Assembly: GCF_964204865.1 (NCBI RefSeq)
Contig: NC_135251.1
Location: 22,010,001-22,074,000, forward strand
Source: Styela clava
Taxonomy: Eukaryota
Length of the DNA: 64,000 nt
Direction of reading: 5' to 3'
Positions 7,101-42,095 of this stretch are shown here, piece after piece. Made by a program: the position numbers and the translations under genes. The notes beneath the pieces were generated by a model. The model saw only the letters and a program-made list of their open reading frames with translations. It made no database searches and was not told where the DNA came from. The first letter of the stretch is position 1. Each line of letters starts with the position of its first letter.

Positions 7101-10100
7101 GGAACTTCGTTGATGTCGTATGGAAGAACAGGACTTGAAGGTAGAGAAGGATTAGGTGATAAATACCAAACTCTATGCTGTCCGAAATACCCTACGTAAT
7201 GAGCACGTTGCGGATACCAAATTCTAAAAAAAATTAAAAAAGTTAGTGAAACCCTACAACAAACAAATCAGTGAAAAAGCATGATAAATTAGGTATAATT
7301 TAGAGTATGAAAACAAAGGGAAAAATCGTTGAGTTTGTAATAAATACTAGAAAAAAAAAATTATGCCAACATATACAGGAATGAGCCTCCATTTCTGCTA
7401 ACCTGACTGATCCATCGGTAGAAGCGGTGATAAGTGCACCAGCTTCATCGCCATAAACTACGGATACAATTTTCATAAGATGAGCCCTCCAACTTATTAT
7501 TTGTCGAACTAGTTCAGTGTTAGCTTGAACTGATGTACCGGTGTTTGATTTTTGAAGAAATTCGGAGACGTCCCACATTGTAACGTAACCCTCTGGCAAA
7601 AATATAAAAGTTGAGGATGTACGGAAAAGAAACCATGATTTTTTATTGTATTCATGCACGTAGACTAAATTATACCAAAGATCAACAATAATTTTGCGCT
7701 CATTTCCATATCTATGTAATGTTCATGTTTACCGGTAGCCGATGTAACATCAAGGTAATATTTTATTTTTCAATCAATAATTAGCAGGTTCTTCCGGTAT
7801 CAAAAATATACCCCTCATCTTGTTCTATATTTATACGAAAGAAGGATAAAATACAAAATAGCACGGGATAAACAGATAGACTCCCAAGACAACACTATAC
7901 ATGTACATAATGTGGCAACAATGTCATGACCATTGCCACGCATGAAGTGAGTTTGCTCACATGAACCGAATGAAAAATTGAAATATTTTATGCAAGAAAT
8001 AGACGCGTTTACATCAGATCTATACAGTATATGTGAGTTTTACATTTGCAGCTTGGGGAGTAAGTTTAGTATTTATAACGCGACTAGGCTTTTAGTTATA
8101 TATTTCAAACCAACGCAAATCAGAATTGTTAAACGAATAGAGATATGTGATTAAAACTGAGTCCAATAGAACTAAAGACAAGGAAATTGAAATTGTTCAC
8201 ATCTAACAGTAATATGGCTCAGATCGCGATTTAAGAGTTTTTGAAATTACAGGCACATATCTTACTTGTATCGCCAACGATAAGATAGTTTGAATATTCG
8301 TCATTACACATCGTGGTGATTGGTGAAACGACTTTGGTCATTGGTACAAGAGATACAAGCAATTCTCCGGTCATTGACCACAATCTGTAATACAAGAAAC
8401 CAGTTCAAAAAAATATGTTTGCAACGAATGGAATTGTGCGCTAATGATTTGCTAACTGCTTTTCTTTCTTATATGCTTTTTTGTCGATGATTCGTATTTA
8501 CATCATTCAATGATGCTGTAGCAAGAGTAAAGATAACTATTCTAATTGATTCTTGCTGGGCCTAAAACGAATATATATTCCAGTAGCATTTCGCCTGACC
8601 AAGGTCAGACTTCTTCAGAAACACAGAGTTCAACTACTCTCAGAATTCCTAATTGCTATAATTATGACAATTCATTATCGTGCCTTGCATAATAATAAAC
8701 AATAATGCTTTGATACAATTCGGCCTAAAAGTCTTAATTCTAATTGGCGATTGTCATTACCTCACGTTAGAATCTTGATGACATGATGCGATAACTGGTG
8801 GGAACTCAACTTCTACTTTCTTGATGGGTTCCGGATCAATGTCCATTAGCTGACGCTCCTCGAAACTTTTTAGATCAAAATCGTCACCGTCTTGTTCTTC
8901 ATCTGAAGTCTACGAAAAATAGGTAAATAGTACAACACATCATGCGATACATTCCATTTTATTAAATCTCTATAAGACAGTTAGAAAATAAAAATTTTAC
9001 TATTATTAATGGATGTTTGTCCCAAAGCATCAACTTCCTTGTTTACTTCCATTACATTGGCTAATCAAAATGTAGGTGACGACGAAACAATTAAATTTTA
9101 GCAGTGACTCTGACACTTTTTTTCACTCAGACAGTTTTCAGGTACGATGACAAACATTCGATTTTTCGTGGATTGTCAAGTTTTAGTTGCATTTTCGAAA
9201 TTTAGGAGCAAATAAAGTTTCAGAGTTTTAGTTTGGCTGCATTACCCAAATATTAATCTGCTATAACCTAGGGCCTGGGCTAAAATTTTTACCGGCACAT
9301 ACCGTATTTTTAAATGCTACGCGGTTGAATATTTTAAATAAATATGATTTGAAGCATGTAAACCAGGTTGTAAACGCTAATTCATGAAAAAAAAGGCAAA
9401 ATAAACCTCAACAATTTTGCAATGGTAAAGTATCGGAAAGATTCCGGGGAAACACCCATAGAATTGAATTTTCGTCCATAAGCATAAGGCCCTCCCTGGG
9501 CATATGAAGGACCGTGTTTCGGGCAACCTTTTATATGACAGTCATTAAAAATAACAAACCTCAACGTCAATCTGTGCTTCTTCAGCAGGATCATCATCAA
9601 CTTCTTCTTTCTTTTCCTCTTTAGCATCATCCTACCAATAAGTAATTTATACTTTTTATTGTTTTTTTATTTATAGAATTTTGGTATAAACATGAGAGTA
9701 TAATAGTGAAGCATGTAATTCGATACAATATACATTTTTATAACAATTACCTATTTAAAATGCCTTTACAATTATGTTTATGCTGGTATTGGAAATTCTG
9801 ATAGTTCGTTTTCTTGCTTTTCTGCATAGCTCACACCAAAGTCTAGAATGGACTTGAAAGCAGCAGTTGTTAGTCAAAAGTGGAATTCTCTATCTATATT
9901 GGTGAATTTCACCTTCTGTTCTTGCTCTGTCTTTTCTTCCTCGTCTTCTTCAGCTTCATCGTCTACCAATCCACCTTCGATCTCCAACATTTTCTTTTTT
10001 CGTAATTTTCTCCTTCTTTTTACTTCTTCTGGATCGGGTACAAATATTTTGTGACACAACCCTGCTACTTGGTTCACGCGATAAGGAAACATTTCTTTCA

Positions 10101-13100
10101 TTCTTCTCTCACGACTGTCGTAACGACTGGGAACTTCTGCCTTTTCGAGTTCAAAGCTGTGAAATAAGAGAAACGCAGTAATAGACGACAATATTTTCAA
10201 AAAGCGTAGATATAAAAGTATTGTGTTTTGCTGGCATCTGCAGTTTCGAACTTCACGCCTTCGTCATGTGATCATGGTTTTTGACAAAGCCTTGACGGCT
10301 TCAGAAAGCCTTCCGATTTTGCATAGTTCAACTATTATATGAATATCTAATTCAAATCATGACCCATTTTTGCCAAAAAGCAAAAAGGAATATTTTAGAA
10401 ATAATCATATATATTATCAAGTATTTGTTACGGTTTAAATGCTCGGTAAGTTTTTTTTCTTTGTTTCATTTATAAAATGTGTATTCATAAAAAACTAGTT
10501 ATTCAGGTGACCGTACATTTGAACCCATGTGTATATCCGCGGGTTCATTCTATATGCGGGTGCTTAAACCCATGGGTTAGGGTTAGTATGGGTTCAAATA
10601 TCCTTAAAACAAAAAAATTTCTATAGGTGCAATAGTATGCAGGTGCAATTGTCGTGGGTTCAAATGTGCGTGGGTTCAAATGTTATGGAACTCGTTATTC
10701 AACGTAAGAAGAATAAAAATTAACACTCACACATTAGATACTGTTCCTTCCTCCGGATTCCACAGAATAATATTTCCATTAGAACATCCGGTAACAAGTA
10801 TACTTGAAACAGAAGGCAAACGGACGTCCATCATCGAGCAGCAAGTGATTTCATGGCGAAGAAAGAGGTCTTCCTAAATTGCAAAAGTATACTAACGGTT
10901 AACAAATTTTGCAATAAAAATTGAAAAATATGTGATGTGGTAGTCAATGTAAATTATAGGCTTATAGTCTTATCTGATCATGCTCTAAATTTTCTAAAAT
11001 ATACATTTTGATTTTAGAGAAGTTTAAATTAGCTTGACTTGTCAACTATTGTAGGTGACAAACATTTTTCTCGTGGAAGTTTCGATTTTACGATATTAGA
11101 AATATTCTAATATTCCTGTGCCAACTTGTGTCTTGTAACATTTCCGTAGCAATAAAAATCTTTATGTACCTACTCTTAGCTCATCAATTGACAGTTGTAA
11201 CTGGCCTGTCAGTAATCTGGTTAGTTCTAAGAAAAAAGAGTCTGATCGCTTAGAGCAGTGGTCGGCAACGGGCAAACCGTGGGCCGCCGAGAATTTTCTG
11301 GTTGGTCACCAATAAATTTCAATTATAGCAGTGATACACAAAAACATTTTAACTACAAAAATTAAATGTTTTTAGTGTACGGGGTTAAATTTAAAATTTT
11401 CAACGAAATTGTTGGGTCTTAAAACTTTTTCCATTCTACTATTTGACCCTCACTTAAAAAACCACCGGTTTAGACAGTCTACCGGAAAGAAAGTCGTCAG
11501 TATCTCTTCTGCATATCAGAATCTCTCACTTTTTCAGTTATTAGTGATCTCCAGCTAAAAGAATTTGTTGGCAATCAATTTTGATATAAAAGTCAAATTC
11601 GCATAAAGTCAGTTGCAAACAATTGGTATATAATCACTTTTCTAAGAATCCCTTTATCGTCGTCGTCTTCAGCAGTTTTCTTCTTTGTCTTTTTGTCGGA
11701 ATCACCTTCTACACTTCCTGTCAAACTTGCAGTCTGAAATGAATTTAATCTGATATATTGCAAAATACTTTGTATTATGTCAAATAATTTACATATGAAT
11801 AAAACTTCAGTATTCGAAGGCCAAACATAATTGTTCGTTTTTACATTTATCTAATTCAAACAAAGAAATTAGTCAACGATATATGTATCCCGTTTCTATA
11901 TGAAAGAAGTCGTGATTCACTTTTGTTGTTTGAAATGATCACCAACTTCAATCTTTTGGTATTATTCATATTCTAAACAATCACGAATTTTGATTTATTC
12001 CATCTACAAAATGTTAATTACAAATGTATAAAATAATTATTAAAGACCATCGGAATGCTTTTTAACGAGTACAACAAGGTGAAAGCTCACAGATGTAGAT
12101 GCGCAACCTTACCTCTGCGCCAGGTTCGGGTGTAGTCTGTGGTGTAGGAGGCCACTCATATGTTCCACTGAACTCACGTACAAAACGAATTTCATCGTTT
12201 TCATCACTATCCTAAATGAAGAAATATCAAACAACTCAAATATAATTTGTAGCATGGTAAAATTATTGTTACTGTTCATCCGTTTTAATTTGAACTCTAA
12301 GATTATGATAAAATAAATTTTAATTCATAAAATAGGTGAAAATATATGGAATTAGAGAAATAACACTACCTCAAATTCTTTCAACTTATTGTTCCATCCC
12401 AATGCTAATATTCTCCGATTTACAATTTCATCTTTCTGTTGATATTCTGTAAAATATATATATTGACAGGTCTCGATGGCATTATCTATAGCAATTTCAC
12501 AATATGACGTAGTGGTTGGCGAGTTCGCGAACTGATGATGTCATCTTGGGGAAAATCTTACTCATTGTATAGTTTGTGACAAACAAATCATCTCGCCAAG
12601 AGGGCAAGATGTTGGGTGGATGTTGTGGTACAGAACAGGATTATGTTCACGCGATTTATTGTAACGTGACCTTCCCGGGGGAAGTGTAGAACACCCAATT
12701 GAAACATTCGTTCTGTCAATAACATGAATTGAAGTTATTTGAGCAGTTTATATTGGTATTAATTTTTACATTATGATCAACAAAATTGATTGGTACAAGT
12801 TTACATCCAATTACTCTACAATTCTTATATTGGGGAAGTTTTAGGCAAATTATCATTTTTCCTCCAATACTACCTATTGTATGCCTATTGATGATAACGT
12901 ACCATGCTCAAATTGCTTGTTTTCGTTTTGCTCATCAGTGTCTTTATTTTTCTTCTTATTTAAATAGGAAATCCACAATATGGAATTATCTTCCTCGCTT
13001 GGGGGATCGAGTTGATATGATTTCATTTCTTGTCCGCTGCTGAACTCCCAGATTTTGATCGATCCTAGTTCGAAAATGAACGAAAAATTCAAGGTTATCA

Positions 13101-16100
13101 TTATTTAAACGAGAATTAATAATTTAAGATAGTCTGTAACATGTTATCCTGATCACTAAATTATTATACTCATGTTATTTTTGACAGCCTGTGCTTTTGG
13201 TAATTAATATCATGCTAACTAACGTTGAAATCTGGAGGTTTAGTCCTTACGCCTGTGATTAAATTCATAAATTCCTCATTACTCAAATTCAGTTATTTCA
13301 AATAATCACAAAAAAAAATATTCTGAAGGACAATTATTCTTACCATCATAGGCTCCAGTGAGCATGCGTGTACCGGTCTCATCAACGCCAGAAGCAGTTA
13401 CTTCGATTCCTAAGCCATGAGCTTCTAATATTTGATACATTTGTCTTCCGCTGTCAATTTCCCAAACCTTTGGGGTAAGCAAGATTATCTTATTACAAGA
13501 TTACAGGTATAGAACTTCCGAAGATTTAAAATTTCTACTAGTCTGTATTACTATCATTACAGATTCTTATGAAATATTCGTTGAATTGAATACGGCTGCG
13601 AATTGAAAGGAAAATTTGATCAGTTACACGAATCGTTCACACACATCCCAGGGAGTCCCAATGTAATATGGATCAATGTAATATACCCGTCTATGATACT
13701 TTCTCATCTTTAGTTAAAGAAAATTGGAAATAGATTAGCTCACTAGTGAAAAAAGAATGCAATTTCTGTCCTAATTACAACAACATGAGCACCTCCAAGA
13801 ATAACAAATTAGCACGATCTATAACCGAATCCCATGAAATTTTATCGTCTGTGATTATGCAAATACGGTATGCATAAAATTATCAAAAACTATAGCCATA
13901 TTCGATACAAAGTCATACAATAACTCGTAAAAGTTTAACAGTTTGGTATACAAGTCGACCCGCTCTCGGCGCGCTAAAATCTTTCTAAATTCTAAAATTT
14001 ACTCACTTTGACGATTGATTCTGAACATGCAGTGATAACTTGATCCATTGGTTTATTTTTAACAACAAGAGTTAGCGGATGATCATGGGTGTGAGGTACA
14101 GACATCGTATCTTGAACACTTCGTGTCATTGGCCACAAGTCTATACTGCTTGAACCTAAAAATGAACGTCTGAACTACCGATTGTAGTACTAAATAACTA
14201 GGAAGCAATATAAAGAGAACGTTTGAGTCACTTGAATTCTTTGTGAAATTTGCAATTAATTTGCAGTTTGCAACTGTTGTGGCTCTCATAACTCGAAATC
14301 ACAAAAATTTTCTTAAAAGTGAAGACTTTGATTTTTAAATATAGCACGGTGATAGTTGGAAGCAACGATCATGAAATTGTTATATTATGTTGGAATAAGC
14401 TTAAGAGGAGTACAAGAGAATTGTAATGCGAATCGCATGAAAAAACTAACCTGTGAATAGTCTGTCATGTCGGCTGTCGAACAGCAAGCAAGATATTCTC
14501 TTGTCTCCTGACCTCTGTTCTGTATCGGTGAACACCTGGTTATACAAGATAATTTGATAATTAATAGTAATTACATCAACCCAATCTCATAAAGAGTCAG
14601 TCTATTTCTTAGTGAATCAAGAATAAATAAATGAGCTAAATGACGGATAGCCAGTGTTCGCGAATATTATCCTATTGGCGTATACGCGTTCTTCAGGGGG
14701 CTAGTATTGCCATTTATGAATTTAGCGACTGAACAGTGAAGTAAGGTAGAGTTAGGAATAGCCATTATATATTAGATCAAGGTGTGCAATTTTTGACGTC
14801 ATTACGCACAAAGCGCACATTTTTGAAAGAAATAATAGCCTTCTTTCACCACTGAAAATATCAAAGCAATTGGTCCAGTAATTAATGAAAAAGGCGATTT
14901 TTTTCTGAACAATAAGAAGGAAAATACAAACAAGAACAACATAAAAACAAAACGATCCATATGTACATTTCGTGTCCAAAAATTATTCCATCCGAATATG
15001 TGCAATGGTATATGGTTGCCTCAAGAAGTCTGACCTCCGCCAGACGAAACGTTACAGAAAGAAATTTTGGTTAGTGTACAGAGGAATGACTCTTGATTCC
15101 CATTCGACCGTATCCGATTTGGCGCGACAATTTGTTTTGAATTCCGTGTCCATATATTTGAGCATCGCTCTCTTGTTATCTTGTTATTCTGCTACAGAAC
15201 CGTAACCTTTGTATATATATTCATCCGTACGCATTGGTGGTTGTCGGCTTTATTTGGCGGAATGCTTGAAAAATTATAAATATGTAAAACTACCACATAT
15301 TTTCTATTATGCGTTTATTCAATGGCTTAGATTTGAGAATTGCTTATTCTTGGCATCTTTGTAGACAAGGAAAATATATCACCTTTCTTTATATCAAGTT
15401 TATTGAACAGAATAGGTTGAAAAAAGTACTAAGGATAAAAACAAACAAACTACGATATTTTAGCTAAGAAAAAAAATAAAAAACAAAACAAATGAAATAA
15501 GAAAACAACTAACAAATGAAAATGATTTTTCAGGAGTAAAAATATTATCAACAGAAACATTTTATCGAAAGTTAGAAATGCTCGAACTTGGTATGGAGTA
15601 ATTACAAATTTCTGAATTTATACTTTGATTAATCGAAGTATCTGTGTAAAAGTTATCGATATATTCTAGAATTTCTTGGAAGTCGACGTCTATATCTTCG
15701 TTGTTTTCGGACATGATGTCATCGCTTGATTCTTTGCCATTCAAATCGGCTCCTTCATTTTGATCCTTCACAACTTTTGTCAAGTATGAAATATAAGAAA
15801 TCGCGCATCGCAAAACTGAAATTTTAGAGATTTTTTCTCCCTGTTGTCTCGGCAACCAATCATACGGAAGATGATCACGTAAAACATGAAGCTGTTTCGT
15901 AACAATTTGAACACGTTTCTTTTCTCGTTGGCTTGCGATTGTTCTTTTTGATGTGAGATGTCGATTTTCACATATAGCGTTGTTTAATGCGTATGGATGC
16001 TGTCTCGATCTCTCTTTTGTGGAGAATTTTCCGTTCAATTTGCATTGTTGATTTTTTGGAGTCGTGAATGGAATATTTTCGTTGTTAACTCCTGTAGATT

Positions 16101-35639: not shown

Positions 35640-36790
35640 ATTAGGATAAACAGCAAGTCCATTTTCAAGTACCAGTGCTGAAAATTTGGAATCGATTAGG
35701 TGGTTGCTGTTGCTATTTTAGAACAGGTCCCGAGGTTATCCACCTCGTGATACGATTCGAGAGAGAGAGTTTCTTTTTCTGGTATCCTGCTGTTTTCCCA
35801 GTCGATGCTATGGTTTTAAGAAAGGGCCGACTTATCAATTTTCTTTTGTTTATCTCTTAGATGTTACTTGCTGCGAGTTTTCAAGCTTCTTTTGGTTTCT
35901 CCAATGTAGACTGAAGAACAATCGCTGCATGGGATGCATATACAACTCCGTTTTTTGTTTAGGACATGGGCGGTCTTTGACGTTGGAGAGCAATTGGCCG
36001 ATAGTGTTTTGGGGTTTAAAACTTAGGTACTCTGATTTTAACGTCTTCCAAAATTCTTCGAATTTTTTCACTTAGTTCTTGGACATACGGAATGGTGGTA
36101 GATGAGATTGGTTTGGGTTTATCAGGCAGTTTTTGGAAATTTACATGATTTCTGAACATTCTCGTTGGATATCCATTTTGTCGTAAAGTCTTCTTAATAA
36201 AATTTAGTTCTTGTTTCTGCTTTGTTTCATCCGATATAAGAGTTTTGGCACGATTCATAAGACTACTAACCACTGAACGTTTATGGTTAAGCGGGTGGCT
36301 GGAATTAAAATTAAGATACCGATTTGTATGGGTCTTTTTCCTAAATATATCAGTCGTCAATTCTCCATTTCCTTCTCTCTGTATCTGGACATCTAAGAAG
36401 GCTACTGTCCCATTGACTTCTTTTTCTATGGTAAATTTTATGCTTGGTTCGATCGTGTTGATGTGGTCGTGGAACGCGTCACAAAATTCCTCTTTGATTA
36501 TGTTGAACGTATCATCAACATATCTTTCCCAGATTCTTGGGCTATTTGGAAAGGACGTTAAGGCTCTTTCTTCCACATCTTCCATGGCCATATTGGCAAC
36601 AACGACCGAAACAGGAGAACCCATGGCTGTACCGAAAATTTGTTTATAGTGCTTCCCCCCTAAAGCTCAGATTGGCCGCACTTAAGCAAATAGTTAAGGC
36701 TTCGTAAATTTGGTCAATTGATAGTTTCGTTCTATCTTTCAGGTTATTATCATCTTCTAGTCGTTTCCGAGTTACTTTTATATAGCGCTA
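35640..36790 (-). mobile_element. decayed Penelope-like retroelement (RT + GIY-YIG endonuclease)
   Basis: RT C-terminal half: GTAMGSPVS...WERYVDDTF...IKFTIEKE...FLDVQI...FRKKTHTNRYLNFNSSHP. Downstream frameshifted GVVY...IPCSDCSSVYIGETKRSLKTR*H (GIY-YIG) at ~35950-35860. Frameshifts and a stop mean it is non-functional. Confidence 0.9.
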
Positions 36791-37028
36791 AATCAAAGAG
36801 GAATTTTGTGACGCGTTCCACGACCACATCAACACGATCGAACCAAGCATAAAATTTACCATAGAAAAAGAAGTCAATGGGACAATAGCCTTCTTAGATG
36901 TCCAGATACAGAGAGAAGGAAATGGAGAATTGACGACTGATATATTTAGGAAAAAGACCCATACTAATCGCTAACTTAATATTAACTCCAGCCACCCGCT
37001 TAACCATAAACGTTCAGGGGTTAGTAGT
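36791..37028 (+). repeat. inverted duplication of Penelope RT segment 36262-36499
   Basis: aatcaaagaggaattttgtgacgcgttccacgacc...ccgcttaaccataaacgttcag is the near-exact reverse complement of 36262-36499. Confidence 0.92.
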
Positions 37029-37512: not shown

Positions 37513-40482
37513 GGCCGCGAGCCGAGGCCCTGAAAAACGCCTAAAAAGTGAGTTTCGTAGCGCACATCAGGTAACTACCTGAAAATGATTTTAAAATGTA
37601 TCTTAAAAATTTAGTAACAAATATTGCCTTGTTCCCACTTCCAAAAGTTGCACGTTTTACGGAAAAGACGCTTTTACTACAAGAAATATGTGCTACGATC
37701 TGTCCTATATTCTCTACATTTTCGGCACTGAACAATGACTTCTGCATGACGTAACAATTGAATTAAACCAGCTGTTAGCGAGCGGATGAATATCAGTTAT
37801 TTCTGCTCGACCTTGCGCTGAGTTGGGCAGGCTTTCCATAGCCCTGTTTAGTTATTATTAGTTAAGTTATGCTAAGACGTTGTTGAAAAATGTATAAGTA
37901 AATTATTAAACACTTGTAGATCCTTACCACGGATATGGGCCGTGAGACGAAACCATGAAAACGCCCAGAAAATGAGTTTCGTAGCGCACATCTGGTAACT
38001 AAATAAATTCTTCAGTTTTGTGTGAAAACGAACATAATGAACGCCTTACAGCTTGTTCCACAATCCTGGTGCGAAATTGAATATAAGAGGTTCTCGGAAA
38101 TTCAATAACCATAAGTTTACAACGCATACATAAGAACTATACAATCCGAAAGCCCTACAGCACACTAACACAAATGTATTCCTGTAATGTTTTGCCTGAC
38201 CAAAATCGGACTTCCTCAGTCAATCATAATTTATTAGGTAGATTACGAAAAATATGGCATACATGTAACCAACAACAAAAAATACTTTAATTGTGTGACA
38301 GGAGTCGGGAGTGACCTCGAAAGCAGCGACACCAACAACGCTGATTCACATTTGAGAATAAATTTTATGTAATAACCACAAGCAGTTTACAACAAGAACA
38401 GCATAAAAAGCTACATCCATTTTATAGAAGCTATCAAGTATCAACCGTATTTATTTTTAAGCAATGAAGTCACAAATTAACATCGTGAGCACGAAAACAC
38501 AAATAAATCAGTTATTTCTCACTTAGAAATTTACCGCAAAAGTCAAGAAAATTAAATGAATGTACAATATGTACATAACATAGTGAACAGAAATATTACA
38601 ATTTACAATTAATCTTTTTTTAGTTTATGTGGTTATGTATTTGAACAAAGGCAATAATATTTCTAGAAACAGGACTACGACACTAACAAATGTCCGAAAA
38701 AAAAAACAAATGTATGATACTTATTAAATCAACTGTAATATCTAATTCACTTTCTTCTGAATTGTTTTCGAAATCCACTAACTCAAAAATCGACTTTTCC
38801 TCTATAGGTGTACTGTGACTTCTGCAGTCAATACAAAAACAAAAATCTGTGCAATTTAAGTTGATTTTGGCACACTTTCATAAATTATTTTGACTATTTT
38901 TCTTTGCAGTTTGCCAACTCAAGAACTGATTTGAGGGCCACATGCTTCTTCAGTGAATCATTGTTGGGTGGAGAGTATAATCCTTATGTTTGACAGTGTT
39001 AAATAGACGTGCCCTGGTACCGGTATCATTTACATTCTTCATATCCTCTTCAAATTCCTCAGCTTTATTTATTAATACCTCGTTAACCTCAAAAGATCTT
39101 CATAGTCGAGGGGAAAAAATGAATTGAAAATCTCAATGAAGTCTCCAACATGAATTTGATGGGCAGTTCCAATTGCAGAAAAGTGCTAAAGTATTTCAAT
39201 ATGAATAGCCCATCTAAGCTGTTTGCAACTATTATGATTCTCATATACCTTTAAGCTTCAAGACTTCTTGTTTAATCCATTTTATAGCACTGATAGCAGC
39301 AGGGATCAGAGCCTGCGTTAGGTCGGATTGGTGGAACATTGCCGTTTTCTTTTGTAGTACAGTATCTAAAATAAGGAAGAAAATAATATTTGGAGCAGCA
39401 TGATTTTAAAAATACCCCTAAATACTAACTAATACCTTGAATACATAATGCATTTTATCTGATGTACTAAATGAGCGTATATATGCTCATTGCATGTTCT
39501 ACAGTCCAGCAGTGTTTGCATACCATTACTAGACTATATCTACACTAAATTTTGATATATCACAGTCTGAAATGTCCTATGACAGTATAAGTATGGACTA
39601 TAGACTATATTTTGAAACATCAACTGTGTGTCTACAACTTCATTTCTCACCTCTCAATCATTTCCAATGCTACCTTTATTTCCACTCCGGCATAACTTAT
39701 CATTGCTTCCCAGGTTCTTGTCGACTCTATGAACTTAGATTTACCTAGACCAACCGACATTAGTAAAATTGATTAATTTCTTCTCTTTCACACAACCGTG
39801 CATTACAGAAACAGCCATTCATTTCTATTTCCAAATATGCTGTGGCCTATATAGTAGTATAAGTCTGCTGAATAGTCAAGAAGAGTCATTAAATTAATCA
39901 TAAACATTTCATGCAAGCCAGAAAATATCGTTGTTTGTGACATATTACAGTATTATTCTAGGTCTAGCCTTCCTTGGAGTTACCGCACCGTACCTATTTA
40001 ACAACGTCTTATGAGCTAGTGCTCAACTAAAATTGCTATTTATGGCAAGGATATACAAGTGTTTAATATCTTACCTATACTTTTCAACACCTCCTTAGAA
40101 TAACTGGACTAATATTACCGGCAACTGAAAAAAACTATGGAAAGGCTACTCAACGCAAAAGCGAGCAGTTGAGTACATCTGATATTCATCCGACCACTGG
40201 GGATCCACCTACAGCTGACTAACTTGACTGTTACGTCATGCAGAAGTCTGCGTTCATTGGCCCATGATACCGGAAAAGCAGAGAAAATAGGACAGATGGT
40301 AACACATATTTATTGTAGTAAAAGCGTCTTTTCTGTAAAACGTGCAACTTTTGGAAGTGGGAACAAGGCAATATTTGTTACTAAATTTCTAAGGAACATT
40401 TTAAAATCATTTTCAGGTAGTTACCTGATGTGCGCTACGAAACTCACTTTTTAGGCGTTTTTCAGGGCCTCGGCTCGCGGCC
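37513..40482. mobile_element. non-autonomous DNA transposon with long TIRs (~250 bp near-identical, degenerate to ~420 bp), probable TA TSD
   Basis: GGCCGCGAGCCGAGGCCCTGAAAAACGCCTAAAAAGTGAGTTTCGTAGCGCACATCAGG... at 37513 and its reverse complement ending at 40482, flanked by TA on both sides. Homology continues to ~37930/40041. An internal partial terminus copy sits at ~37937-38001. Confidence 0.85.
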
Positions 40483-41220: not shown

Positions 41221-41510
41221 CAGGGCTACTCAACTACTTTTACCGAAGATCCGCATACAAAACTTCAAAATTAATTGGGTCCGTCTTTCCAGAATTTATA
41301 TAGTCTATCGGCATCCTTAAACGCATACTTCCTCGACCGGCTAATGATTGTTAGCTAATCCAAATTGCTTAATATGGAGTTATAGTTCTTTTCATATATA
41401 CTTTAAAAGTGGGGCTAATTATCTAAAATAAAGAATTAGGCTAGGTGCGGTCCGAATCAAATACTCGAAAGGTCCGAATTCGGACCACGGTCGCCAGTTG
41501 GGTAGCCCTG
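41221..41510. mobile_element. hAT-like MITE
   Basis: TIR CAGGGCTACTCAACT / AGTTGGGTAGCCCTG; no clear TSD. Confidence 0.6.
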
Positions 41511-41632
41511 CTCTTTCCTTCCTATGCGCAGGTGGATCCGTATGCGTATAACGCAAGGATGCTATAGCAAGAGTGAAAATAACTATTCTATTTAATTCAA
41601 GAGTCTTGCTGCACACTTACACAAATATATTT

Positions 41633-41674
41633 CTGTAACATTTCGTTTGACCAAGGTCAGACTTCTTTAGACAA
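41633..41674 (-). ncRNA. minimal hammerhead ribozyme-like motif (copy C, core mutated)
   Basis: Minus strand TTGT-CTAAAGA-A-GTCTGACC-TT-GGTCAAAC-GAAA-TGTT-ACAG. Confidence 0.45.
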
Positions 41675-42095
41675 TCATTTTGTATTTTCATTTCTGTCCC
41701 AAGCTCTGACATAATTCTTAACATTTTCCCACACGGGTAGCGAAGCGACTATGATTTTTCTTGTAGTTCATTTGAATATGTCTCGCATAGCATTTCTGTT
41801 CGGATTTGCTGTGTTTGGTATTGTTCACAAACTTATCACAACAATGTATCTATGGAACCAATTTACTGCCCGATTGTAAATCGCGTTTTTCTGTGTTTGT
41901 TTTGTTATTTTTTTTGTTTCAACTTTACTTAGAGTTAGGCCTACTGTATGCCCGTTGTTTTGTCCAACGAAGATAAATGATTGATTGATCATTTTCATTT
42001 GTAACTGGGAGGCGATATGTGCGTATTTGATATTAGATAAACCTGTGATTTTCTTTTTGTCTCAGTGATTTTAGATTACTGCTATCTAAACTGAA

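What the first reader, a model, noticed from the sequence alone, without database searches (positions are those of the whole stretch)
8512..8620. Dispersed repeat family carrying a minimal hammerhead ribozyme (retrozyme / non-autonomous PLE candidate), copy A
Seen: three loci (8512-8620 -, 15016-15096 +, 41558-41674 -) share a motif whose consensus is TTGT-CTGAAGA-A-GTCTGACC-TT-GGTCAGAC-GAAA-CG-TT-ACAG. Each is followed by a homologous 3' flank; on +, copies A and C share gatgct.tagcaagagt.aa.ataactattcta...tcttgctg...aatatat. This is the CUGANGA / stem II / GAAA hammerhead core, with a near-absent stem III carrying the palindrome AACGTT and a 4-bp stem I (UUGU/ACAG). Established: such minimal type-I hammerheads, thought to cleave as dimers, mark Penelope-like element LTRs and non-coding retrozymes. 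Inference: an unannotated ribozyme-bearing non-autonomous retroelement family, possibly mobilised by the PLE RT lineage whose relic is at 35.6-36.8 kb. Copy A keeps the core boxes intact and is sense-oriented within the WDR64 pre-mRNA.
Basis: partly seen in the sequence, partly recalled or inferred. Interest (0 to 1): 0.8.

Follow-up and report, generated by a model that had tools for sequence, protein, structure and literature searches.

The report
Decayed Penelope retroelement ends with hammerheads
The three repeats are real, but they are old, mutated end-pieces of an ordinary Penelope-like jumping gene whose ends carry the already described "minimal hammerhead" ribozyme motif, so this is a new example of a known thing and not a new element class.

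Summary
Three loci, plus a fourth at 38124-38233, share a CUGANGA / 8-bp hairpin / GAAA motif and homologous flanks (3 matches in the window, 0 in shuffles).

They are short terminal fragments of Penelope-like elements (PLEs). [quoted passage not shown] These insertions also show target-site duplications and inverted 5'-truncated partners.

The motif has every sequence feature of the metazoan PLE "min-HHR" of Cervera & de la Peña 2014. These are a long helix II, a short helix I, an unpaired base between A9 and G10.1, a G10.1-C11.1 pair, a palindromic ACGU in place of helix III, and U17. The genome holds at least 889 copies with intact boxes, against 4 in a control.

All four window copies are dead or crippled. 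Copy A keeps the boxes but has lost A15.1-U16.1, the palindrome and helix I. Copy B has G5>C, copy C G5>A and copy D G12>A.

They are by-products of autonomous PLEs rather than a separate retrozyme family, and they are not linked to the RT relic at 35.8-37.0 kb. No covariation and no RNA evidence of cleavage could be obtained.

The scan has already met this PLE/hammerhead family twice on other DNA of this genome (s1-815903, s1-814887).

The parts
8420..8637 (-). Copy A: solo pseudo-LTR/5'-UTR unit of a Penelope-like element. It runs from the family's usual 5' end to slightly beyond its usual 'long' 3' end and is about 80 % identical to family 1.
   Evidence: BLAST and local alignment to full-length elements; locus L001.
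8581..8622 (-). Hammerhead-like motif of copy A. CUGAAGA 8618-8612; unpaired A 8611; helix II 8610-8603 paired with 8600-8593 (8 bp, one G.U), loop 8602-8601; GAAA 8592-8589; UGCU 8588-8585 in place of CGUU (A15.1.C16.1, palindrome lost); helix I degraded.
15003..15099 (+). Copy B: a fragment ending at the family's 'short' 3' terminus. The box is CUCAAGA (G5>C), helix II is reduced to 5 bp, and GAAA-CGUU-ACAG is kept.
41496..41689 (-). Copy C: solo unit, 84-89 % identical to families 1 and 2. The box is CUAAAGA (G5>A), helix II has a C.A mismatch, and C15.2 has changed to U.
38124..38233 (-). CUGAGGA is intact but G12>A (AAAA) and CAUU replaces CGUU. A further upstream piece of the same 3' UTR lies at 38378-38468 (-).
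35840..36657 (-). Relic of a different, older PLE: an RT segment (aa ~541-756) and a GIY-YIG segment (aa ~842-900). It is 32-47 % identical to families 1-3 and has no hammerhead of its own.
   Evidence: tblastn.
36813..36998 (+). Inverted RT arm of the same relic, in the head-to-head arrangement typical of PLE insertions.
   Evidence: tblastn.
8386..8760 (-). Presumed host intron that contains copy A in sense orientation. Exon-like open frames end at a GT donor and resume after an AG acceptor.
   Evidence: The gene's identity was not established.

Best explanation
The loci are decayed, 5'-truncated terminal fragments of canonical endonuclease-bearing Penelope-like retrotransposons. These 'solo' units cover the pseudo-LTR and 5'-UTR. 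The pseudo-LTRs of these elements carry the known metazoan minimal type-I hammerhead motif (min-HHR).

In the living families the unit runs in this order:
- a TATA-like box;
- about 25-32 nt further on, the common 5' end of copies;
- 17-23 nt further on, the CUGANGA box;
- an unpaired A, an 8-bp helix II and GAAA;
- ACGU (no helix III), then U17 and the predicted cleavage site;
- two alternative 3' termini, 47-54 nt and about 160-170 nt downstream of that site;
- the ATG of a 940-977-aa RT+GIY-YIG ORF about 50 nt after the second terminus.

Shown here: the anatomy, the copy numbers and the link to the ORF.

Inferred from the literature: two motifs pair through the ACGU palindrome to form helix III and cleave after GUU. 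This would process multimeric or read-through element RNA.

Inferred from the end positions: the ~200-nt solo units are run-off cDNAs. Reverse transcription would start at the internal site in the 5' UTR and run to the transcript's 5' end.

The four window copies are old insertions, 11-25 % diverged, with mutations at essential ribozyme positions. They are expected to be catalytically dead passengers, including copy A inside an intron.
For: 1. Full-length elements.
- L058 has an 11-bp target-site duplication. It has a 238-bp 5' repeat that is 99.6 % identical to the 3' UTR, and a hammerhead both upstream and downstream of a 940-aa ORF.
- L057 (977 aa) and L048/L049/L050 (960 aa) are built the same way.

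2. Conservation. The three families share 66-80 % protein identity. Their 3' UTRs do not align except for a block of about 105 nt that holds the motif (A2).

3. Pattern of change. All 6 substitution events that separate the three family motifs fall on N7, loop II or wobble-preserving helix II positions. The chance of this is about 1e-4 to 3e-4.

4. Match to the published class. Every sequence feature listed for PLE min-HHRs in PMC4209133 is present: a 7-8-bp helix II, a short helix I, a base between A9 and 10.1, G10.1-C11.1, palindromic 15.2-16.2, paired motifs on opposite strands, and many single truncated copies.

5. Insertion anatomy. Inverted 5'-truncated partners, 11-13-bp target-site duplications and a 'tail' at one end only match the PLE descriptions in PMC8557442 and PMC11167929.

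6. Abundance. 405 and 889 pattern hits, against 0 and 4 in controls.
Against: - No Rfam hammerhead model matches, even at E<=10 on 161-301-nt stretches. Scoring 74 of 48,684 first-look candidates from the whole genome with RF00163 also gave nothing. This is expected for variants without helix III, but it means there is no independent model-based support.
- No base pair shows a change on both sides, and covariation does not exceed shuffles.
- The conserved block reaches about 50 nt beyond the motif, so part of the constraint may serve reverse-transcription start or promoter function rather than catalysis.
- Helix I is only 3-4 bp.
- The sequencing runs available were contigs of uncertain kind and show nothing about RNA ends.
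- Genomic copies keep the whole motif instead of starting at the predicted cleavage site. Their templates were therefore uncleaved.
Confidence: 0.9

Rival explanations
1. A separate non-autonomous, ribozyme-bearing retroelement family (a retrozyme or SINE-like unit) that propagates on its own RNA and borrows a PLE's enzymes.
For: Many units have a discrete 5' end: 13 of 30 begin within a few bases of each other. ORF-less derivatives do exist elsewhere. There is a 3 x 360-nt head-to-tail array with 100 % identical units. A second insertion has a nearly identical internal deletion. Motif hits spaced 574-588 nt occur on another contig. A 2026 preprint argues that animal retrozymes derive from PLE pseudo-LTRs.
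Against: The window copies are single, not tandem. The unit is collinear with the 5' region of the autonomous elements, and the younger solo copies are 94-98 % identical to it. The units start downstream of the TATA-like box and so carry no promoter of their own. They share both 3' termini with full-length copies. The exact 360-nt deletion junction is found in one array only, with one or two diverged relatives.
Confidence: 0.1
2. The hammerhead-like sequence is conserved for another reason, such as binding of the element's RT/EN near its start sites or a promoter-proximal element. In this reading it does not self-cleave in vivo.
For: The invariant block extends about 50 nt beyond the motif, up to the 'short' 3' terminus. 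There are no compensatory double changes. Genomic copies retain the full motif. In the only PLE studied biochemically, catalytic mutants did not affect insertion, and no RNA-seq reads ended at the cleavage site (PMC11167929). Activity of min-HHRs in vitro is low (PMC4209133).
Against: Changes between families avoid all 13 catalytic positions and all pair-breaking options in helix II. The exact hammerhead core recurs in PLEs across animals, plants, fungi and protists. Cleavage of PLE variants as dimers has been reported, according to the Lünse et al. 2017 title cited in PMC7761336 (the paper is not held).
Confidence: 0.2
3. Copy A is a domesticated intronic ribozyme that cuts the host pre-mRNA, like the intronic hammerheads of amniotes.
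For: It lies in sense orientation within a short presumed intron and keeps CUGAAGA, helix II and GAAA.
Against: A15.1-U16.1 is A.C, the dimerisation palindrome is lost and helix I does not pair. There is no partner copy nearby for a dimer. It is about 20 % diverged, like a neutral relic. Cross-species conservation could not be examined.
Confidence: 0.02

Closest known systems
Minimal type-I hammerhead motifs (min-HHR) in the pseudo-LTRs of metazoan Penelope-like elements (Cervera & de la Peña 2014, PMC4209133)
   Same: The core boxes, the unpaired base between A9 and G10.1, the G10.1-C11.1 pair, a 7-8-bp helix II, a 3-4-bp helix I, and a palindromic 15.2-16.2 with no loop III. The motif sits in both flanking repeats of an RT+GIY-YIG ORF. 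Hundreds of dispersed single motifs come from truncated copies, and pairs occur on opposite strands.
   Different: Nothing essential. The motif is unusually uniform within this genome: a few near-identical variants, where that paper stresses high heterogeneity. Cleavage was not tested here.
Canonical EN+ PLEs with pseudo-LTRs, inverted 5'-truncated partner and 'tail' (Craig et al. 2021, PMC8557442; Frangieh et al. 2024, PMC11167929)
   Same: A single ORF with RT followed by a C-terminal GIY-YIG. The linker has a C-x4-C-x2-C motif of the kind described for Neptune/Nematis. Partial tandems form pseudo-LTRs. Insertions are head-to-head with target-site duplications. Two alternative 3' termini lie downstream of the hammerhead.
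   Different: The stretch between the two termini is about 105-115 nt here, against the 30-40 bp quoted for the PLE tail. The clade was not placed by phylogeny.
Metazoan non-LTR retrozymes (tandem 150-400-nt repeats with type-I hammerheads that give circRNAs; PMC7761336; preprint 10.64898/2026.07.22.740005)
   Same: A hammerhead-bearing non-coding unit related to a PLE pseudo-LTR. Elsewhere in this genome, ORF-less 360-nt (and about 580-nt) units stand in head-to-tail arrays.
   Different: The window copies are single, decayed and collinear with autonomous elements. Retrozymes usually carry canonical hammerheads with loop-loop contacts. Circular RNA was not examined.

Membership tests
Hammerhead ribozyme, minimal PLE type-I variant | Catalytic boxes C3-U4-G5-A6-N7-G8-A9 and G12-A13-A14 | tested here: met
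   Met in all three autonomous families and in 889 genomic copies against 4 in the control. In the window it is met only by copy A. Copies B and C have lost G5 and copy D has lost G12.
Hammerhead ribozyme, minimal PLE type-I variant | A15.1-U16.1 pair, non-G at position 17, palindromic 15.2-16.2 allowing a dimeric helix III | tested here: met
   The family reads A-CG-U then U17. Pair 15.1-16.1 is A-U in 24 of 26 rows. Copy A fails this feature: A.C, with a non-palindromic UG.
Hammerhead ribozyme, minimal PLE type-I variant | Helix II closed by a loop, with G10.1-C11.1 and an unpaired base between A9 and 10.1 | tested here: met
   G-C in 26 of 26 rows and the extra A in 26 of 26. Helix II cells are 94.7 % paired. 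The minimum-free-energy fold forms the hairpin.
Hammerhead ribozyme, minimal PLE type-I variant | Helix I formed by the flanks | tested here: inconclusive
   Only 3-4 bp, with 76 % of cells paired. The minimum-free-energy folds pair core bases instead. The published class also has a short, poorly defined helix I.
Hammerhead ribozyme, minimal PLE type-I variant | Covariation supporting the helices | tested here: not met
   0 pairs show changes on both sides, and the score does not exceed shuffles. Only one-sided, wobble-preserving changes occur. Their placement is non-random.
Hammerhead ribozyme, minimal PLE type-I variant | Match to the curated Rfam hammerhead models | tested here: not met
   No hit at gathering score or at E<=10. 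RF00163 on the genome gave nothing, with few candidates scored. Rfam's type-I model includes helix III, which this class lacks.
Hammerhead ribozyme, minimal PLE type-I variant | Site-specific self-cleavage | not testable with these tools
   Only contigs of uncertain kind were available. No raw RNA reads were available.
Penelope-like element (EN+) | Single ORF with reverse transcriptase followed by a C-terminal GIY-YIG endonuclease | tested here: met
   RVT_1 in families 1 and 3 (E 8e-10 and 1.5e-9); GIY-YIG in all three (E 3e-5 to 1.4e-4) near the C-terminus.
Penelope-like element (EN+) | Pseudo-LTRs from partial tandems, inverted 5'-truncated partners, target-site duplications, tail at one end | tested here: met
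   Direct repeats of 238-1371 bp at 99.6-100 % identity. Head-to-head arms and 11-13-bp duplications. The short end lies on one arm and the long end on the other.
Metazoan non-LTR retrozyme | Head-to-tail tandem of short ORF-less units, each with a hammerhead | tested here: not met
   Window copies are single and kilobases apart, on both strands. The feature is met only at another locus, L060 2070-3162.
Metazoan non-LTR retrozyme | Accumulation as circular RNA | not testable with these tools
   No raw RNA reads were available.

The most novel reading that the evidence does not exclude
In this genome the PLE promoter would fire about 20 nt upstream of the hammerhead, so every element transcript would begin with the ribozyme. 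The hundreds of ~200-nt solo units would then be run-off cDNAs, made from a reverse-transcription start site in the 5' UTR that lies about 110 nt beyond a first start site. That spacing is three times the published PLE 'tail'. Dimer-dependent cleavage would remove the capped leader. It could thereby sort transcripts between translation and use as a template. With several young families and ORF-less tandem derivatives, the genome could serve to test the still unknown role of PLE hammerheads.
Probability: 0.2. Interest if true: 0.45.

Novelty: new member of a known kind. Interest (0 to 1): 0.2.

Why it matters
It assigns four unannotated repeats in the window, and many hundreds genome-wide, to a known class: PLE pseudo-LTRs carrying minimal hammerheads. 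It shows that the intronic copy is a dead passenger rather than a regulatory ribozyme. It corrects the proposed link to the local RT relic.

Beyond annotation, the genome holds three recently active PLE families with intact ORFs and near-identical hammerheads, plus ORF-less tandem derivatives. This is convenient material for the open question of what PLE hammerheads do. The class itself has been described since 2014.

Tried and rejected
- Rfam scans of the window (gathering score), of copy A and of a young copy (E<=10), and RF00163 on the whole genome, gave no hammerhead hit. I read this as a limit of the models, not as evidence against the motif.
- Pair counting on 26 distinct variants showed no compensatory double changes.
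- Sequencing runs: 15 were listed, all Logan contigs, with RNA status only guessed. Laying four of them on a full-length element showed depth ratios like those of the DNA-like run and no usable ends or circular joints.
- A search for hammerheads in more distant PLE copies (37-56 % protein identity, L051-L054) found none. These copies are decayed or cut by the fetched range.
- Pfam on the host exons, searched singly and never joined, gave nothing or weak WD40-type hits.
- I first read the segment after the 'short' end as a unique 3' tail. It turned out to be the start of the 5' UTR of the next unit.
- The large protein searches were not run, because RVT_1 plus GIY-YIG already settle the protein class.

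Full report
**Observation.** On the stated strands the three loci read as follows.
- Copy A has CUGAAGA, an A, an 8-bp hairpin and GAAA.
- Copy B has CUCAAGA.
- Copy C has CUAAAGA.

A 34-nt family pattern with up to 3 mismatches finds exactly these three places. It finds none in 100 dinucleotide-preserving shuffles. Copies A and C also share about 110 nt of downstream sequence (A1). So the repeat is real. Copy A is about 8420-8637, B about 15003-15099, and C about 41496-41689.

**What the repeat belongs to.** The 149-nt unit has 795 first-look candidates in the 377-Mb genome. Reading 30 of them showed two recurrent pictures.
- In some, the unit continues upstream into a longer common sequence.
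- In others, a 5'-truncated inverted copy abuts it head-to-head, and the whole is flanked by an 11-13-bp target-site duplication.

Following the longer copies upstream led to an ORF whose C-terminus carries a GIY-YIG motif. The motif lies about 375 nt downstream of the stop codon.

A protein search of the genome then found three families with intact ORFs of 940, 977 and 960 aa. They are 98, about 80 and about 66 % identical to the query. Pfam finds RVT_1 in families 1 and 3 (E 8e-10 and 1.5e-9). It finds a C-terminal GIY-YIG in all three (E 3e-5 to 1.4e-4). That domain order defines canonical endonuclease-bearing Penelope-like elements (PLEs) (PMC8557442).

In every full-length copy the motif occurs twice, about 170-200 nt upstream of the open frame and about 375-650 nt downstream of its stop. 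Both occurrences sit inside direct repeats that are 99.6-100 % identical. In L058 the element is bounded by an 11-bp duplication.

**The motif.** The three families have 3' UTRs that do not align, apart from one block of about 105 nt that is nearly invariant. It comprises the motif and about 50 nt after it (A2). Within the 34 nt from C3 to U17 the families differ by six events. One is at N7, two are in loop II, and three are transitions in helix II that turn a Watson-Crick pair into G.U. If changes fell at random, all six landing on tolerated options has a probability of about 1e-4 to 3e-4.

The features match, one by one, those listed for metazoan PLE 'min-HHRs' (PMC4209133):
- a helix II of 7-8 bp;
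- a short helix I;
- a conserved unpaired base between A9 and G10.1;
- a G10.1-C11.1 pair;
- a palindromic 15.2-16.2 with no loop III;
- location in both pseudo-LTRs;
- many dispersed single motifs from truncated elements;
- pairs on opposite strands 100-700 bp apart.

Genome-wide, CTGANGA-19 nt-GAAACGTT occurs 889 times against 4 for the reversed control. The family-specific 34-mer occurs 405 times against 0.

**Limits of the ribozyme evidence.**
- No Rfam hammerhead model scores, even at E<=10 on very short stretches. RF00163 on the genome also gave nothing, although only 74 candidates were scored. This is expected for variants without helix III, which were originally found with a descriptor rather than a covariance model.
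- On 26 distinct variants no pair changes on both sides, and covariation does not exceed shuffles.
- Helix I is only 3-4 bp. Minimum-free-energy folds reproduce helix II but not the hammerhead junction.
- The only sequencing runs on offer were assembled contigs whose RNA status is a guess. Laid on a full-length element, they gave no information on RNA ends.

Catalysis is therefore inferred from class membership, not shown. The literature itself reports low in vitro activity and an unknown role in vivo.

**Anatomy of insertions.** Against a permuted reference (3' UTR plus the following 5' UTR), 13 of 30 direct copies begin at reference positions 353-359. That is 17-23 nt upstream of the CUGA box. 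It lies 25-32 nt downstream of a TATA-like box, which reads TTTAAATA in family 1 and TATAAATA in family 2.

Copies end at one of two places. The 'short' end lies 47-54 nt past the predicted cleavage site. The 'long' end lies about 160-170 nt past it, roughly 50 nt before the ATG. In head-to-head insertions one arm has the short end and the other the long end. This corresponds to the PLE 'tail' and to the two internal reverse-transcription start sites shown biochemically for an Anolis PLE (PMC11167929). Here, however, the interval is about 105-115 nt, not 30-40.

My inference is that transcripts start at the clustered 5' end. The ~200-nt solo units would then be cDNAs that started at the long site in the 5' UTR and ran off the 5' end. 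Because these units retain the whole motif, their templates were not cleaved.

**State of the window copies.**
- Copy A is about 80 % identical to family 1. It keeps both boxes and an 8-bp helix II. It reads UGCU where the family has CGUU, so 15.1-16.1 is A.C, the palindrome is gone and helix I no longer pairs.
- Copy B has G5>C and a 5-bp helix II.
- Copy C has G5>A, a C.A mismatch and C15.2>U.
- Copy D has G12>A.

All four are expected to be inactive.

Copy A lies, in sense, within a presumed ~375-nt intron bounded by exon-like frames on the - strand. The exons were searched one at a time and never joined. They gave nothing or weak WD40-type hits, so the gene name WDR64 is unverified.

The RT relic at 35840-36657 (-), with an inverted arm at 36813-36998 (+), is only 32-47 % identical to the hammerhead-bearing families. 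It is a different, older PLE and not the source of these copies.

**Retrozyme question.** The window copies are not retrozymes: they are single, decayed and collinear with autonomous elements. ORF-less derivatives do exist elsewhere.
- A 3 x 360-nt head-to-tail array with identical units joins the 5' UTR and first codons directly to the last ~60 nt before the motif (L060 2070-3162).
- A second insertion has almost the same deletion.
- Motif hits spaced 574-588 nt stand in two inverted arrays on another contig (not fetched).

Earlier notes of this scan on other DNA of the same genome describe the 360-bp and a 587-nt array and reached the same reading (s1-815903, s1-814887).

**Verdict.** These are decayed terminal fragments of known-type PLEs carrying the known minimal hammerhead. 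It is a new member of a known kind and of low interest. Two modest points are worth recording: the long interval between the two 3' termini, and the promoter-proximal position of the motif.

Noticed in passing
window 38124-38233 (-) and 38378-38468 (-): A fourth decayed copy of the same PLE unit, with G12>A, and a separate upstream piece of the same 3' UTR about 145 nt away. It might be the 5' pseudo-LTR of the RT relic downstream, but this could not be settled.
   Followed up: partly
window 35840-36998: A head-to-head pair of RT (and GIY-YIG) fragments from a PLE that is only 32-47 % identical to the hammerhead-bearing families. No hammerhead of its own was found.
   Followed up: partly
L060 2070-3162 (G000:C3:14331569-14332661): Three identical 360-nt head-to-tail units of an ORF-less family-3 derivative, each with the motif. 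A near-identical deletion derivative is inserted at L071 (G000:C10, about 16097200-16097400).
   Followed up: partly
G000:C1:6694453-6696793: Five motif hits spaced 574-588 nt, three on the - strand and two on the + strand. They suggest two inverted arrays of ~580-nt units.
   Followed up: no
L058 1700-1760; L057 1400-1450: A TATA-like box (TTTAAATA or TATAAATA) lies 25-32 nt upstream of the position where many copies begin. That position is itself 17-23 nt upstream of the CUGA box. This is a likely transcription start that would put the hammerhead at the very 5' end of the RNA.
   Followed up: partly
L001-L030, L058, L061, L062: There are two alternative 3' termini about 105-115 nt apart, one on each arm of head-to-head insertions. 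This interval is longer than the 30-40-bp 'tail' reported for PLEs.
   Followed up: partly
L055 4471-4573: Two hammerhead motifs only 65 nt apart on the same strand, a local duplication within a decayed PLE copy on a small contig.
   Followed up: no
L031 197-3655: An intact 1152-aa ORF that reads like a LINE-type protein, with endonuclease-like and reverse-transcriptase-like motifs by eye. It lies next to a truncated PLE copy and is unrelated to the finding. No domain search was run.
   Followed up: no
window 7300-13101 (-): Exon-like frames with WD-repeat-like sequence on the - strand around copy A. Pfam support is weak (E 0.02-0.05) and the name WDR64 was not verified.
   Followed up: partly
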